IMG/VR virus record: IMGVR_UViG_3300047472_000309
Location: 124,001 to 188,000 of that record
DNA: 64,000 nt
Strand: one strand, 5' to 3'
The notes beneath the pieces were generated by a model. That model did no database searches, was not told where the DNA came from, and was given only the letters and a program-made list of their open reading frames with translations. The position numbers and the translations under genes are program-made. Positions within the stretch are counted from its first letter, which is position 1. Each line of letters opens with the position of its first letter. This document shows, piece by piece, positions 14,800 to 25,089 of this stretch.

Positions 14800-15531
14800 C
14801 TATACCACGTTCTGATAAGACTTGCCGTTGATGATGTCAGAGATCAACGAATGATGAGCGCCGTACTGACGACCAATCTCCCGCATTCCCATCGTCCCCT
14901 TCAACTGGCGAATCTCTCGAACCTGTTCTTCTGTGAACCGAGAACTACCCACTTCTGTCCCCTGCAGAATAGGAACCAAGTTATTAGCATAGGCGTGCTG
15001 GGTATTCTCTTTGTACGTCGCCCATTCAAGATTCGTGTCGCGATTGTCGATCTTCACCGCGTTCAGGTGATTAACGATTGGCTTGTTATCTGGGTTAGGG
15101 ACAAAAGCTTTTGCGACTTCACGACTCGTCTTGATTGCGCGATTCACTCCATTGCGACCACCGATCTTGGTGATGTGATGGAGATAGTTGCCATCTACTA
15201 AATTTTGCGACACAACGCGATTTGTCCGCTTCGAATACAAATCTCCGTTTCGAGTGACCAGGAAATAATCTTCCAGGCCCTCAATCGGTTTCGCGTCGTT
15301 ATGAGGACTTGGGTCATCGGCGGTTCGCTTACGAATCTCGCCGTCCTCAATAATTAGGTTGAGAGGGAAAGGCTCCCCATCTTCCATTTCCTGCTCAAAC
15401 TGGTCCAGCGGGCGAAGCTCGTGCGTGTTACCCGATTCTTTCAAATGGGTGATCAACATGAATTCTTTGCCGTTCTTGTCTTTTGTTTGTCGCAGAACCC
15501 ATTCGTCCAAATTAGGCATTACCAAAGGCAT
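14800..15531 (-). CDS. HNH homing endonuclease (NUMOD4-HNH-HTH type)
   Basis: IEGLEDYFLVTRNGDLYS (NUMOD4-like), VAKAFVPNPDNKPIVNHLNAVKIDNRDTNLEWATYKENTQHAY (HNH), C-terminal HTH. Confidence 0.9.
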   Translation of the reverse strand: MPLVMPNLDEWVLRQTKDKNGKEFMLITHLKESGNTHELRPLDQFEQEMEDGEPFPLNLIIEDGEIRKRTADDPSPHNDAKPIEGLEDYFLVTRNGDLYSKRTNRVVSQNLVDGNYLHHITKIGGRNGVNRAIKTSREVAKAFVPNPDNKPIVNHLNAVKIDNRDTNLEWATYKENTQHAYANNLVPILQGTEVGSSRFTEEQVREIRQLKGTMGMREIGRQYGAHHSLISDIINGKSYQNVV

Positions 15532-18742: not shown

Positions 18743-19234
18743 CTAGGTCGACAAGACAAGCTGATACTGCCTATACTCGACTTCGCCGGTGAGACAGTGC
18801 CGGAGAGCAACAGCGTCCCACATGGCGTTGTGTTGTACAGCGCCCTTAGGTGGATTCAAATACGGGTCCACCCGTTTAACTTCGAAAGCAATGCCCGGAA
18901 TGTCAATCATCTTGCCCGGTCCCGTAATCAGCAACTCGCTGAAATACTTCACGTCATCGGGCCAGTCGGTGACAATACAGACTTCGCCTTCTTCCTCTTG
19001 CAAAAATGCTTGCAGGAGGTCCTGAAACGCGCGATACGACTGGTGATGGCAGGTAATACCGCGCGGCACAGATCCGAGGTACGGCACCACGTTGTTCGTC
19101 ACCCACCCGTCTAACTGCTCTAGCGGGGGCGGAAACACGTTATATAGCGCAGTACCGTCTTCTTTGATGAGGCCGACGGAGATGACCTCACCCTTGTAAC
19201 TATTGAATTCAAAATCCGTGAATATGCGTTTCAT
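18743..19234 (-). CDS. DEDDh 3'-5' exonuclease (RNase AS/Rv2179c-like)
   Basis: IFTDFEFNS...ISVGLIKEDG (ExoI) and HNAMWDA (ExoIII). Confidence 0.8.
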   Translation of the reverse strand: MKRIFTDFEFNSYKGEVISVGLIKEDGTALYNVFPPPLEQLDGWVTNNVVPYLGSVPRGITCHHQSYRAFQDLLQAFLQEEEGEVCIVTDWPDDVKYFSELLITGPGKMIDIPGIAFEVKRVDPYLNPPKGAVQHNAMWDAVALRHCLTGEVEYRQYQLVLST

Positions 19235-20412: not shown

Positions 20413-20595
20413 TTAGCGCTCTTTCGGGAACCGACGATTGAGTTCGTTGAACTCCAGATTCAATTGCATTCCCAATTGATGGCGAATCCGCAACAGTCCT
20501 TCTTTGATGATTGTACGGCCTTGTTCGATCTGTTCATCGGAAAGACCTTCGTCATCCAAAAGGTTTGCTGCAACACGTTCGATATCGGCGGCCAT
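20413..20595 (-). CDS. small hypothetical protein
   Basis: 60 aa, AAGGAGG RBS. Confidence 0.6.
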   Translation of the reverse strand: MAADIERVAANLLDDEGLSDEQIEQGRTIIKEGLLRIRHQLGMQLNLEFNELNRRFPKER

Positions 20596-20604
20596 GTCGC
20601 CTCC

Positions 20605-21582
20605 TTAATGCTGCTGGTGGGTACCTTCGACTTCGCGTGCAATGCGCGCTCGCGTACGACGTTGCAAGGCATCGATCGCCGCGTTGATGTGATCCAGCGC
20701 TTCCTGGTTTTCGTCACAGGCGAACTTGCCGTCCTGGAAACCTTGCAGACGATGACCGCACACGGCGAGCAACGATTCGAGCGTCACGCCGTTCTGACCG
20801 ACCTCCGGCACCACACCGTTCTGGAACAGCACGTGCAGATACATGCGCTGACCTGCCCAGTGCTCGCCTGCTGACGCGTTGCTTTCCGTGTCGAAGCCGG
20901 AGAGCTGGTAGCTGTGGTTCGCACCGCTGATTTCGTTGGCGCCATCGCCGACCACCACGACCAATTGCGTATCGGCGCCTTCGACGAGATGCCGAGTAAT
21001 CACAGCGCCGCGTTGACGACCCAGCGCGCGTGCTTCGGCTGCTTCTTCCGTGGCCGGATCACCTTGACGATAATTGGCTTCCGCGTCCGTTTCGTACGCG
21101 GCCGTGACGATCACGTCTTCGAGCGGCACGTCTTGATGAAAGCCCTTGCTACCCGTACGCATACGACGAATTTCGTCGATCACTTCTTGACCGGCCACGA
21201 CTTGGCCGAACACGCAGTAGCCCCAGCCTTGTGGCGTGGCCGACGTATGGTTCAGGAACTCGTTGTCGCGCACGTTGATAAAGAACTGCGCGCTCGCCGA
21301 ATGCGGATCGTTGGTGCGTGCCATCGCGATCGAATACGCGATGTTCTTCAGACCGTTGTCCGCTTCGTTGCGAATCGGCGCGTCCACCGTCTTTTGCTTC
21401 ATGCCGGGTTCGAAACCGCCGCCCTGGACCATGAAGCCATCGATCACGCGATGGAAGATCGTGTTGGTGTACTGACCCTTGTGCACGTAAGCGAGGAAAT
21501 TTGCGACAGTCTTGGGGGCGCGCTCATCGTCGAGCTCGACGAGGAAGTTACCCTTGTTGGTTTCGAATAGGACGTGTTTCAT
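20605..21582 (-). CDS. ppiB: cyclophilin-type PPIase fused to a Tad1-like anti-Thoeris/CBASS sponge domain
   Basis: aa 1-163: [40 protein letters not shown]; C-terminus: GANHSY...FQNG...[36 protein letters not shown]...[14 protein letters not shown], matching the Tad1 pattern. Confidence 0.85.
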
Positions 21583-21626: not shown

Positions 21627-22385
21627 TTAAACCGGGTGATACTCGGGCGAAGTCCGATAGCGCGAGGCGAGCGTGTCAGCTGCAACAGCCTGCAGGTTTT
21701 CCTGCGAGACATACTTGGGTGCACGCAATTCGTTCACGCGATCTGCGTCCAAATCGTAACCGACCAGTCCCACCTGTTCCAGCGCGATCCGGGTCAGGTC
21801 CTGGTGGATCTGTTTACGAATCGCTTCTTCTTGTAGCGAAGGCGCATCGGGAAACGTAAAGAGTGCCTCGATGTGCGACGTGTAAAAGAAGGTGTCGGCG
21901 AGTTCGAGGTTGATACTGCCGCCGATCTTGGCTTCCAGCGTGATCTTGATCCCAGCAGATGTAAACGGGTCAAGCACGTTCAGGATCTTCCCATGCACAT
22001 CGCGCGTGTAGCTATCGATGGTCGTCGAGAACGTCACGCCGCCTTCAAGCTCAACCGTGCGGTAATTACTGCGCGTGTACTTGAGCGGCGCATTGACTTC
22101 TGCGCGGATGTACTGATCGCCGACTTTCACGTAGACGTTTTCCAACAGCGCCTTGTGACTGATAGCGTCCGTCACACCCAACGGCGATGTCTCCAGCAAA
22201 CTTTCTGTTTGGCCCACGCCGAGAATCGAGAACTGTTGGCCGAACCGATACGGCGCCGTCGACAACGAGTCGTTGTCGATTTGAACGATGTGTTGCAATT
22301 CTCCCACCAAAAGTCGCTCGACTTCCGGCCGATACAACGGAACAATCCGCACCGCGCGGAACCGTTTAAAATGTTGCGCTTCCAT
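21627..22385 (-). CDS. truncated paralog of phiKZ-like major capsid protein (putative)
   Basis: IVPLYR, TAPYRFGQQFSILGVGQTESLLET...TDAI, GSINLELADT, VGYDLDADRVN resemble, from memory, the central part of Chimalliviridae major capsid proteins. Confidence 0.5.
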   Translation of the reverse strand: MEAQHFKRFRAVRIVPLYRPEVERLLVGELQHIVQIDNDSLSTAPYRFGQQFSILGVGQTESLLETSPLGVTDAISHKALLENVYVKVGDQYIRAEVNAPLKYTRSNYRTVELEGGVTFSTTIDSYTRDVHGKILNVLDPFTSAGIKITLEAKIGGSINLELADTFFYTSHIEALFTFPDAPSLQEEAIRKQIHQDLTRIALEQVGLVGYDLDADRVNELRAPKYVSQENLQAVAADTLASRYRTSPEYHPV

Positions 22386-24672: not shown

Positions 24673-25089
24673 TTATTGATCGTGCGGCGGAAAGTCCTCG
24701 AGCGGAATCGTGACTCCTGCCAGCTTATGGGTCGAATCACCACAGTACACGAGATAGCCGCCAGTGATAAAGTAGTGGCATACCACATCCACTATTTGCT
24801 CATAATGATCGGGCTTTCGCGTGGGCAAGTCGAGCCGCTCGTCAAAGCGTCGCGTATACCGTAGCAGCAGCGACGGATGGCAGGTAAGTTGTTCGTTAAA
24901 TTGACCATTCCACGTCCAGACCGGATGCGGGTGGGCTTGAAGCTGCTGCGCAATATAAACCACATGGTTCATATCACACGCAGGACAGTGGTGAACAATT
25001 CCGATTCGATGATTCGGATCTTTCGAATCGACCAGCCAGCGCAACTTCTTCGAGTCAGTCATGATCCTCCGTCCATACTGCGACGCCAT
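24673..25089 (-). CDS. DUF6527-like Cys/His metal-binding protein
   Basis: HCPACDMNH...WTWNG...PSLL...CHYFITGG...CGDSTHKLAG. Confidence 0.7.
   Translation of the reverse strand: MASQYGRRIMTDSKKLRWLVDSKDPNHRIGIVHHCPACDMNHVVYIAQQLQAHPHPVWTWNGQFNEQLTCHPSLLLRYTRRFDERLDLPTRKPDHYEQIVDVVCHYFITGGYLVYCGDSTHKLAGVTIPLEDFPPHDQ

What the first reader, a model, noticed from the sequence alone, without database searches (positions are those of the whole stretch)
20605..21582. Cyclophilin-Tad1 fusion: immune-signal sponge joined to a host-like PPIase
Seen: one uninterrupted ORF. Aa 1-163 is an intact PpiB-type cyclophilin. After a ~30-aa linker the C-terminal ~125 aa reads GANHSY...LFQNG...[36 protein letters not shown]...[16 protein letters not shown]. 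Known (from recall): Tad1 proteins follow GA.H.Y...FQ.G...GV....LL....DRL..FQ.G.F...EN..AL.H......RR...R..R.V.GT and sequester Thoeris gcADPR and CBASS cyclic nucleotides. Tad1 is normally a small stand-alone protein. Inference: the fusion may aid folding, localise the sponge, or oligomerise the PPIase.
Basis: partly seen in the sequence, partly recalled or inferred. Interest (0 to 1): 0.75.

Follow-up and report, generated by a model that had tools for sequence, protein, structure and literature searches.

The report
Cyclophilin–Tad1 fusion in jumbo phage
A giant soil phage has joined a prolyl isomerase taken from its host to Tad1, a protein that soaks up bacterial immune alarm signals, and related phages keep these two parts next to a capsid-protein fragment, which suggests the anti-immune protein is carried inside the virus particle.

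Summary
Window 20605..21582 (minus strand) is one uninterrupted 325-aa ORF. Residues 4-161 are a PpiB-type cyclophilin with all catalytic motifs. Residues ~162-193 are a linker. Residues ~194-325 are a Tad1 domain that keeps the gcADPR/cyclic-dinucleotide pocket (F282, N292, R309, R313). The fusion is not an artefact: contigs from four metagenome runs span the junction, and the cultured Burkholderia phage FLC9 and several other assemblies have the same gene.

The genome is a complete 310.6-kb PhiKZ-like (chimallivirus) phage. PhiKZ gp184 is already known as Tad1, a head protein reported to be cut by the head protease and injected. So Tad1 carrying an N-terminal extension is not new in this group.

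The new parts are the cyclophilin and a three-module cassette of cyclophilin, truncated major-capsid-protein paralogue and Tad1. The cassette recurs in permuted forms: MCP-like gene then Cyp-Tad1 (here); Cyp-MCP-like-Tad1 in one ORF; Cyp gene then MCP-like-Tad1. One close relative has cleanly deleted Tad1 but kept the cyclophilin.

Best reading (about 0.5): a capsid-linked, pre-packaged anti-Thoeris/CBASS sponge with a co-travelling foldase or docking module. Packaging, cleavage and the cyclophilin's role are untested. I rate it a new variant of a known kind.

The parts
20605..21582 (-). Whole Cyp-Tad1 ORF, 325 aa plus stop codon
   Evidence: ORF list. Contigs of four runs span it without indels. 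It carries the only Tad1 domain and the only cyclophilin in the 310.6-kb genome.
21100..21573 (-). Cyclophilin (PpiB-type PPIase) domain, aa 4-161
   Evidence: PF00160 E 6.4e-43. NCBIfam PpiB 236.5 bits, below the equivalog cut-off of 297. 3s6m E 2.7e-76. 70-74% identical to Trinickia/Paraburkholderia/Burkholderia PpiB. The motifs FHRVI..FM.QGG, AMART, AQFFxN and GWGYxVF are kept in all 10 phage copies.
21004..21099 (-). Linker, aa ~162-193, acidic and Ala-rich
   Evidence: Low pLDDT at aa 164-171 and a short helix at 179-188 in the AF2 model. The L016 deletion starts at about codon 192. It contains AYE, ATE and AAE (S/A/G-x-E-like) motifs, but these are not conserved in relatives.
20608..21003 (-). 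Tad1 sponge domain, aa ~194-325
   Evidence: phmmer against PDB Tad1 chains E ~1e-8 and PhiKZ gp184 E 7.5e-17. AF2 model pLDDT 93.5. Foldseek top 20 hits are all CbTad1/CmTad1. 3,550 family representatives.
20644..20739 (-). Stretch holding the predicted gcADPR/CDN pocket residues F282, N292, R309, R313
   Evidence: These align to CbTad1 F82, N92, R109, R113 (alignment). Mutating those residues abolishes gcADPR and cGAMP binding (bioRxiv 10.1101/2023.11.15.567273). They are invariant or nearly invariant in alignments A5 and A8.
21627..22385 (-). Upstream gene: truncated paralogue of the PhiKZ-type major capsid protein (MCP-like module), 252 aa
   Evidence: PF25620 PhiKZ_MCP positions 146-365, E 6.5e-14. 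phrog_3231 major head protein. 30% identical to aa 235-445 of the phage's own 734-aa MCP, E 8e-21. The same module lies upstream of, or is fused within, the Tad1 gene in FLC9, L014, L016, L018 and L020.
20413..20595 (-). Downstream 60-aa ORF with a strong AAGGAGG ribosome-binding site; function unknown
   Evidence: ORF list. In relative L016 the Tad1 domain is deleted and this ORF is fused in frame to the cyclophilin and linker.

Best explanation
The gene encodes a two-domain protein of a rhizosphere PhiKZ-like (nucleus-forming, chimallivirus) jumbo phage whose host is probably a member of the Burkholderiaceae. The C-terminal domain is a Tad1 sponge. It should bind the TIR-made signal gcADPR, and probably some CBASS cyclic dinucleotides, in a pocket at a dimer interface. 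That would keep the Thoeris and CBASS effectors switched off. This step rests on homology and on conserved pocket residues. The N-terminal domain is a prolyl isomerase captured from the host lineage and kept catalytically intact. The protein is one part of a conserved three-module cassette: cyclophilin, truncated major-capsid-protein paralogue, and Tad1. By analogy with PhiKZ gp184/Tad1, I infer that the cassette loads the sponge into the phage head so that it enters the next cell with the DNA, before any phage gene is expressed. PhiKZ gp184 is reported to have its N-terminus wedged into the capsid and its Tad1 part freed by the head protease and injected. The cyclophilin would travel with the sponge. 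It could act as a foldase that helps ejected or assembling proteins reach their native state, or as a module that docks onto a proline-containing capsid element. Domain identities and the genetic linkage of the three modules are shown here. Packaging, cleavage, injection and the cyclophilin's role are inferred.
For: Tad1 identity. Pocket residues F282/N292/R309/R313 match CbTad1 F82/N92/R109/R113. The genome is a chimallivirus: PhiKZ-type MCP (E 1e-198), gp175-type head protease (E 5e-38), chimallin, PhuZ. PhiKZ gp184 is a capsid-inner-surface protein cleaved by gp175 (PMC11297242). It is called Tad1 and described as injected (10.1101/2025.11.23.690004; PMC13282480). Cassette: the MCP-like gene lies directly upstream here and in FLC9. 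L018/P0004 and P0006 are single ORFs of Cyp-MCP-like-Tad1. L020 has a separate cyclophilin gene next to an MCP-like-Tad1 fusion. Seven of the 11 closest Tad1 representatives carry the MCP-like module. The Tad1 domains of all three arrangements form one clade (82/95). Among 80 viral Tad1 loci, a cyclophilin lies within 6 kb in 5, and all 5 also have the MCP-like module; the 74 loci without that module have none. The nine fused cyclophilins form one clade (100/98) and keep all catalytic motifs at 58-76% identity. The cyclophilin is retained where Tad1 is deleted. The PhiKZ capsid chain 8y6v_I does not match the Tad1 fold, which fits the Tad1 part being free rather than structural.
Against: In this phage Tad1 is covalently joined to the cyclophilin, not to the MCP-like module. 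Nothing resembling the N-terminal capsid wedge of gp184 is present. The predicted complex of the MCP-like protein with Cyp-Tad1 gave no answer (score 0.01). S/A/G-x-E motifs in the linker are not conserved, and L015 has none. The gene is not syntenic with PhiKZ gp182-184. No virion proteome or expression data exist for this phage or for FLC9. Residues matching the CbTad1 cyclic-trinucleotide site (R90, T97) are Asp here, and the Met-Trp hexamer contact is Asp-Ala. The ligand range and the oligomeric state may therefore differ from those of CbTad1.
Confidence: 0.5

Rival explanations
1. The protein is a free cytoplasmic sponge. It is made after infection and is never packaged. The cyclophilin only speeds folding, adds solubility or changes the oligomeric state of Tad1 in cis.
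For: There is no N-terminal capsid-targeting region: the cyclophilin starts at residue 4. Here Tad1 is not covalently linked to the MCP-like module. The complex prediction gave no support. The flanking genes are small accessory genes of unknown function, as in anti-defence islands.
Against: This view does not explain why the cyclophilin and Tad1 are found only together with a truncated capsid-protein module, in three different permutations. It also does not explain why the cyclophilin is kept in L016 when Tad1 is deleted. The only characterised chimallivirus Tad1 is a head protein.
Confidence: 0.3
2. The cyclophilin domain is itself the capsid-docking module. It would bind a proline-containing loop of the MCP or of the MCP-like paralogue, much as cyclophilin A binds the HIV-1 capsid and as the cyclophilin domain of TRIMCyp targets capsids. 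In this arrangement it would replace the covalent MCP-like anchor.
For: In this arrangement the cyclophilin sits where the MCP-like module sits in MCP-like-Tad1 relatives, N-terminal to Tad1. The MCP-like protein has a proline-containing C-terminal tail. Cyclophilin-capsid binding is established for HIV-1 (my own knowledge). A host PpiA chain appears in a phage lambda tail-fibre structure, 8xck.
Against: No interface was predicted (which is uninformative either way). In L018/P0004 and P0006 both the cyclophilin and the MCP-like module are present in one chain, so the cyclophilin is not simply a substitute. Full conservation of the catalytic motifs suggests that enzymatic activity matters.
Confidence: 0.15
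3. The cyclophilin is a neutral host-gene capture that happened to land in frame with Tad1 and has no role of its own.
For: The domain is clearly of host origin, 70-74% identical to Burkholderiaceae PpiB. Phage genomes often pick up host genes.
Against: The fused copies form one old clade with long branches yet keep every catalytic motif. The fusion persists across phages only 58% identical in this protein. The cyclophilin survives the Tad1 deletion in L016. A second, stand-alone cyclophilin next to MCP-like-Tad1 in L020 may be an independent capture (AU test p 0.028, post hoc).
Confidence: 0.05

Closest known systems
PhiKZ gp184 (Tad1 of Pseudomonas phage PhiKZ; PDB 8y6v chain I)
   Same: Both are chimallivirus proteins with a C-terminal Tad1 domain (35% identity over 110 aa, E 1e-20). 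gp184 is the best-scoring solved relative. The head protease gp175 has a homologue in this genome. In each genome it is the only Tad1 copy.
   Different: The 115-aa N-terminal region of gp184 has no similarity to a cyclophilin or to the MCP-like module. PhiKZ has no adjacent truncated-MCP gene. The two genes are not syntenic. In the domain tree gp184 sits on a very long branch outside the clade studied here.
Stand-alone Tad1 sponges (CbTad1 7uav/7uaw/8smd, CmTad1 8kbb, SBSphiJ7 Tad1)
   Same: Same fold (TM 0.66-0.79 normalised to the target). The four gcADPR/cGAMP pocket residues are conserved.
   Different: Those proteins are about 120-135 aa with no fusion partner. The cyclic-trinucleotide site residues of CbTad1 (R90, T97) and its Met-Trp hexamer contact are replaced here by D290, D297 and D304-A305.
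MCP-like-Tad1 fusion proteins of uncultured jumbo phages (P0007, P0008, P0010-P0013, P0015, P0018)
   Same: These are the closest Tad1 domains (50-56% identity). They carry the same truncated-MCP module that is encoded immediately upstream here.
   Different: In them the capsid module is covalently attached to Tad1 and most lack a cyclophilin. The complete L027 genome has none at all.
Cellular PpiB cyclophilins of Burkholderiaceae (for example 3s6m)
   Same: 67-74% identity, the same length and the same catalytic motifs.
   Different: The cellular proteins are single-domain. The phage copies form their own long-branched clade and score below the NCBIfam PpiB equivalog cut-off.
Virus-associated cyclophilins in eukaryotic systems (cyclophilin A packaged via the HIV-1 capsid, TRIMCyp, the mimivirus-encoded cyclophilin); from my own knowledge
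   Same: A cyclophilin that is genetically or physically coupled to a viral capsid, and, in TRIMCyp, a captured cyclophilin fused to an immunity-related protein.
   Different: These are unrelated viruses and hosts. The analogy is functional only and was not tested here.

Membership tests
Tad1 (Thoeris anti-defence 1) sponge family | Significant sequence homology to experimentally characterised Tad1 proteins | tested here: met
   phmmer against PDB: CbTad1 and CmTad1 chains at E ~1e-8 and PhiKZ gp184 at E 7.5e-17. The precomputed Pfam label is PF24729 Acb2_Tad1_hairpin.
Tad1 (Thoeris anti-defence 1) sponge family | Fold: an N-terminal antiparallel beta-sheet followed by two long C-terminal helices | tested here: met
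   AF2 model with pLDDT 93.5, showing strands followed by helices at residues 83-99 and 105-130 of the 140-residue domain construct. The Foldseek top 20 PDB hits are all Tad1, and the next hit is at E 0.25.
Tad1 (Thoeris anti-defence 1) sponge family | gcADPR / cyclic-dinucleotide pocket residues (CbTad1 F82, N92, R109, R113) | tested here: met
   They align to F282, N292, R309, R313 (alignment; residues). They are invariant or nearly invariant across 68 relatives.
Tad1 (Thoeris anti-defence 1) sponge family | Cyclic-trinucleotide site (CbTad1 R90, T97) and hexamer contacts | tested here: not met
   The aligned residues are D290 and D297, and the Met-Trp helix contact is D304-A305 (alignment). 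This is a sub-function of some Tad1 proteins, not a condition of membership.
Tad1 (Thoeris anti-defence 1) sponge family | Binds gcADPR or cyclic nucleotides and rescues phage from Thoeris or CBASS | not testable with these tools
   This needs binding assays and plaque assays.
Cyclophilin-type PPIase (PpiB-like) | Pfam PF00160 match above the gathering score over the full domain | tested here: met
   147.2 bits against a cut-off of 21.7, aa 4-161.
Cyclophilin-type PPIase (PpiB-like) | Catalytic and substrate-site motifs (Arg in FHRVI, FM.Q, AQFF, GWGY.VF) | tested here: met
   Present here and in all 10 phage copies. Near-identical to 3s6m across these motifs.
Cyclophilin-type PPIase (PpiB-like) | NCBIfam PpiB equivalog score (NF008057, cut-off 297 bits) | tested here: not met
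   236.5 bits. It is PpiB-like but diverged, so it should not be named an equivalog.
Cyclophilin-type PPIase (PpiB-like) | Measured prolyl isomerase activity | not testable with these tools
   This needs an enzyme assay.
PhiKZ gp184-type head-packaged, injected Tad1 | Tad1 domain at the C-terminus of a longer protein in a chimallivirus that encodes a gp175-type head protease | tested here: met
   (MCP, protease, chimallin, PhuZ). The Tad1 domain is C-terminal.
PhiKZ gp184-type head-packaged, injected Tad1 | N-terminal region homologous to the capsid-bound part of gp184 | tested here: not met
   No similarity outside the Tad1 domain. The N-terminal extensions of Tad1 proteins are heterogeneous.
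PhiKZ gp184-type head-packaged, injected Tad1 | Presence in virions, cleavage by the head protease, delivery into the cell | not testable with these tools
   Only indirect evidence exists: genetic linkage to a truncated-MCP module. Linker protease motifs are not conserved.

The most novel reading that the evidence does not exclude
The cyclophilin is a virion-delivered enzyme. It would be loaded into the head together with Tad1 through the truncated-capsid-protein module and ejected into the next host cell. There it would act as a co-injected foldase that helps the sponge, and perhaps other ejected proteins such as the virion RNA polymerase, to refold quickly after passing through the tail. This would be the first phage known to inject a prolyl isomerase. 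It would also show that chimalliviruses use MCP fragments as a general adaptor for packaging anti-defence cargo.
Probability: 0.2. Interest if true: 0.8.

Novelty: new variant of a known kind. Interest (0 to 1): 0.6.

Why it matters
Tad1 is so far the only characterised anti-defence protein of nucleus-forming jumbo phages, and it is reported to be delivered ready-made from the capsid. This locus shows that, in one soil lineage, the sponge is genetically tied to two further modules: a truncated copy of the major capsid protein and a prolyl isomerase captured from the host. The three modules are shuffled between fused and separate forms. This suggests a modular way of loading cargo into giant-phage heads, and it gives a first hint that a foldase takes part in that process. 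The cultured relative FLC9, a natural Tad1-deleted relative (L016) and a cyclophilin-free relative (L027) make the idea directly testable.

Tried and rejected
1. Assembly error or hidden stop: rejected.
2. Readthrough or frameshift joining the upstream MCP-like ORF to Cyp-Tad1: rejected. The two frames differ, and a stop lies three codons upstream of the ATG in the cyclophilin frame (open frame 328 aa).
3. Predicted complex of the MCP-like protein with Cyp-Tad1: the tool gave 'no answer' (score 0.01), so I use it neither for nor against.
4. Head-protease motifs (S/A/G-x-E; the motif is from my memory of Thomas et al. 2012): present in the linker but not conserved in relatives, so I claim no cleavage site.
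5. A common N-terminal module among the ~230-aa Tad1 proteins, including gp184: none found; they are heterogeneous.
6. PADLOC: no hit. The local Pfam copy does not detect the Tad1 part at E <= 10, although PF24729 is precomputed for it.
7. Synteny with PhiKZ gp182-184: absent. Only the gp199 RNase H homologue lies nearby.
8. Papers not held in the library: Li et al., Nature 2024 (PMC12159963), and Thomas et al. 2012 (PMC3323674). PhiKZ Tad1 injection is therefore cited from secondary sources.
9. Literature searches for a cyclophilin in jumbo phages or chimalliviruses, or together with Tad1: nothing relevant.

Full report
OBSERVATION. The window holds one uninterrupted ORF at 20605..21582. It has an ATG start and encodes 325 aa. 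Pfam places a cyclophilin domain (PF00160) at aa 4-161 with E 6.4e-43. NCBIfam scores it as PpiB-like at 236.5 bits, below the equivalog cut-off of 297. The best solved relative is the Burkholderia pseudomallei PPIase 3s6m (E 2.7e-76), and the alignment is almost identical across the catalytic motifs. A sequence search of aa 185-325 against the PDB finds the Tad1 structures 7uav, 8kbb, 8kbe, 8kbg and 8kbh at E ~1e-8. It also finds a better match, E 7.5e-17, to chain I of 8y6v, 'gp184'.

THE FUSION IS REAL. Contigs from four rhizosphere metagenome runs, from four samples, cover the junction between the two domains with no insertions or deletions. One run (X4) carries a variant strain with 14 substitutions and no gaps. 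The same architecture is found in the cultured Burkholderia glumae jumbo phage FLC9 (gp131, 58% identity over the full length). It is also found in several independent metagenomic proteins and contigs: P0002, P0003, P0005, L013, L014 and L015.

WHAT THE GENOME IS. The window lies in a complete 310,654-bp virus record with direct terminal repeats. The genome encodes a PhiKZ-type major capsid protein (E 1e-198), a homologue of the PhiKZ head maturation protease gp175 (E 5e-38), chimallin, the nuclear shell protein (E 6e-34), and the tubulin PhuZ (E 8e-25). The PhiKZ head-gene block gp175-gp182 is syntenic at 44-62 kb. This is therefore a nucleus-forming chimallivirus. The cyclophilin is 70-74% identical to cellular PpiB of Trinickia, Paraburkholderia and Burkholderia. 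The nearest cultured relative infects Burkholderia, and the reads come from rhizosphere and soil. Together these point to a host in the Burkholderiaceae. That is an inference. The genome has a single Tad1 domain and a single cyclophilin, both in this ORF.

THE TAD1 DOMAIN. An exhaustive search with aa 185-325 finds 3,550 family representatives. Stand-alone members of about 130 aa align from about query position 10, so the domain spans about aa 194-325. An AlphaFold2 model of the domain is confident (pLDDT 93.5, pTM 0.84). Its 20 best PDB matches are all CbTad1 or CmTad1 structures (E 3e-8 to 9e-7; TM 0.66-0.79 normalised to the target), and the next hit is at E 0.25. I mapped the residues shown by mutagenesis to bind gcADPR and cGAMP in CbTad1 (F82, N92, R109, R113; bioRxiv 10.1101/2023.11.15.567273) through the HMMER alignment. 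They correspond to F282, N292, R309 and R313. All four are conserved here and are invariant or nearly invariant in 68 relatives. By contrast, the CbTad1 residues needed for cyclic-trinucleotide binding (R90, T97) align to D290 and D297. The Met-Trp pair in the helix that forms the hexamer contact aligns to D304-A305. I therefore expect gcADPR and cyclic-dinucleotide binding at a dimer interface. I do not predict cA3 binding or a hexamer.

WHAT WAS ALREADY KNOWN. 8y6v is the PhiKZ capsid. [quoted passage not shown] A transposon-mutagenesis preprint calls orf184 'tad1'. [quoted passage not shown] A 2026 review states that Tad1 is injected by PhiKZ and blocks CBASS and Thoeris, citing Li et al., Nature 2024, which I could not read. 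So in chimalliviruses Tad1 is not a small stand-alone protein. More widely, 64 of the 150 nearest representatives are 180 aa or longer. My Tad1 model does not match chain 8y6v_I. This fits the view that the capsid-resolved part of gp184 is its N-terminal region, but an absent match is weak evidence.

THE NEW FINDING: A THREE-MODULE CASSETTE. The gene immediately upstream (21627..22385, minus strand, 252 aa, 44-bp gap) is a truncated paralogue of the PhiKZ-type major capsid protein. It matches PF25620 at positions 146-365 (E 6.5e-14) and the PHROG 'major head protein' family. It is 30% identical to aa 235-445 of the phage's own MCP (E 8e-21). The same module accompanies Tad1 in relatives, in different arrangements:
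- A. MCP-like gene followed by the Cyp-Tad1 gene: this window, FLC9 gp132+gp131, L014, L024.
- B. One ORF of Cyp-MCP-like-Tad1, about 530 aa: P0004 on a 326.7-kb contig, and P0006.
- C. A separate 167-aa cyclophilin gene immediately upstream of an MCP-like-Tad1 fusion: L020/P0008 on a 253.7-kb contig.
- D. MCP-like-Tad1 with no cyclophilin anywhere in a complete 272-kb genome: L027.

An HMM of the MCP-like module hits 7 of the 11 closest Tad1 representatives. In a tree of Tad1 domains, the Cyp-fused, Cyp-MCP-fused and MCP-fused proteins form one clade that contains nothing else (support 82/95), and arrangements A and B are interleaved within it. Among 80 IMG/VR loci with a related Tad1, a cyclophilin lies within 6 kb in five, and all five also carry the MCP-like module. 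None of the 74 loci without that module has a cyclophilin. These loci are not phylogenetically independent, so the count describes a pattern and is not a statistical test.

EVOLUTION OF THE CYCLOPHILIN. The nine fused phage cyclophilins form one well-supported clade (100/98) nested among Burkholderiales PpiBs. Their branches are much longer than those of the cellular proteins. This fits a single capture from a host, followed by divergence and module shuffling. The stand-alone cyclophilin of L020 falls outside the clade. An AU test of a single origin for all ten gives p 0.028, but I defined the group after seeing the tree, so a second independent capture is only suggested. All ten copies keep the catalytic motifs FHRVI..FM.QGG, AMART, AQFFxN and GWGYxVF, which argues for selection on enzyme function.

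A NATURAL DELETION. L016 is a 315-kb contig, 98% complete, whose cyclophilin is 98% identical to the window's. It lacks exactly the segment from about codon 192 of the fusion gene through the stop codon, the ribosome-binding site and the first two codons of the downstream 60-aa ORF. The result is an in-frame cyclophilin-linker-small-ORF protein of 251 aa. No Tad1 domain is detectable anywhere in that genome. L016 also has two tandem copies of the MCP-like gene. Three points follow. The domain boundary inferred above is confirmed by nature. Tad1 is dispensable, as expected of an accessory anti-defence gene. And the cyclophilin is retained without Tad1, so it is not merely a helper for folding Tad1.

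MECHANISM. Shown here by homology: a Tad1 sponge domain with an intact gcADPR/CDN pocket, joined to a cyclophilin with intact catalytic motifs. Shown here by comparative genomics: both are tied to a truncated-MCP module. Inferred from PhiKZ: the cassette places the sponge in the head, and the head protease may release it. The sponge would then enter the next cell with the DNA, before cytoplasmic TIR or CD-NTase sensors can raise their signals. That timing matters for a phage whose DNA is shielded but whose host can still abort the infection through signalling systems. Speculative: the cyclophilin is co-packaged as a foldase for proteins that must refold after ejection, or it docks the fusion onto a proline-containing capsid element. 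I put about 0.5 on the capsid-linked model as a whole. I put about 0.9 on the two domain identities and about 0.2 on the injected-foldase version.

EVIDENCE AGAINST, AND GAPS. In this phage Tad1 is covalently joined to the cyclophilin rather than to the MCP-like module, and nothing resembles the N-terminal region of gp184. The complex prediction for the MCP-like protein with Cyp-Tad1 returned 'no answer'. Candidate protease motifs in the linker are not conserved. There is no route by frameshift or readthrough from the MCP-like ORF into the fusion ORF. No virion proteome or transcript data exist. The main rival, a purely cytoplasmic two-domain sponge, keeps about 0.3.

NOVELTY. Tad1 and its packaged form in PhiKZ are known. 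I found no paper that links a cyclophilin to Tad1, to jumbo phages or to chimalliviruses. The library does not hold most subscription journals. The cyclophilin fusion and the permuted cyclophilin / MCP-fragment / Tad1 cassette appear to be undescribed. I rate this a new variant of a known kind, with interest 0.6.

Noticed in passing
L016:4001-4756 (relative of window 20413-21582): A close relative (315-kb contig) has a clean in-frame deletion of the whole Tad1 domain. The deletion fuses the cyclophilin and linker to the homologue of the window's 60-aa downstream ORF. No Tad1 is found anywhere in that genome. The loss might reflect escape from a defence that senses sponges, but that is speculation.
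   Followed up: yes
L016:2392-3954: The same relative carries two tandem copies of the truncated-MCP gene upstream of the cyclophilin gene, where the window has one.
   Followed up: partly
G000:C1:105154-105807 (outside the window; locus L004): A second truncated MCP paralogue (PF25620 positions 144-360, E 2.9e-17, in a 392-aa open frame) lies about 7 kb from the full-length MCP gene. The genome therefore has at least two MCP-fragment genes.
   Followed up: no
window 24673-25089 (-): A 138-aa ORF with a PF20137 domain (DUF6527, called BubE in newer Pfam releases), E 4e-7. The same family occurs a few kb from the cassette in L018 and L020, so it is a conserved neighbour of unknown role.
   Followed up: partly
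window 18743-19234 (-): An RNase H-like protein, homologue of PhiKZ gp199, which is annotated as a structural protein in PhiKZ. It lies 1.4 kb downstream of Cyp-Tad1 and is the only trace of synteny with the PhiKZ gp184 region.
   Followed up: partly
window 14800-15531 (-): An HNH endonuclease ORF (phrog_59, E 6.7e-31), probably a homing endonuclease in the same minus-strand gene run.
   Followed up: no
window 21371-21472: Word depth rises 5- to 20-fold in all four metagenome runs, and many short contigs end here. This is the most conserved core of the cyclophilin, so cellular ppiB genes of other community members map to it. It is an assembly hazard, not a feature of the phage.
   Followed up: yes
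window 20942: A C>T difference (G214D in the protein, at the start of the Tad1 domain) is fixed in three of the four runs. It is a strain polymorphism and creates no stop codon.
   Followed up: yes
PDB 8xck (hit): A structure of the phage lambda central tail fibre contains a chain of the E. coli periplasmic cyclophilin PpiA. This may be a precedent for a cyclophilin bound to a phage structural protein.
   Followed up: no
window 20605-21030 (-): The PHROG families that match the Tad1 domain (phrog_23843, phrog_2428, phrog_22140) are all labelled 'unknown function', and PADLOC-DB has no model for it. Routine annotation would therefore miss this anti-defence domain. FLC9 gp131 is annotated as a hypothetical protein.
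   Followed up: yes
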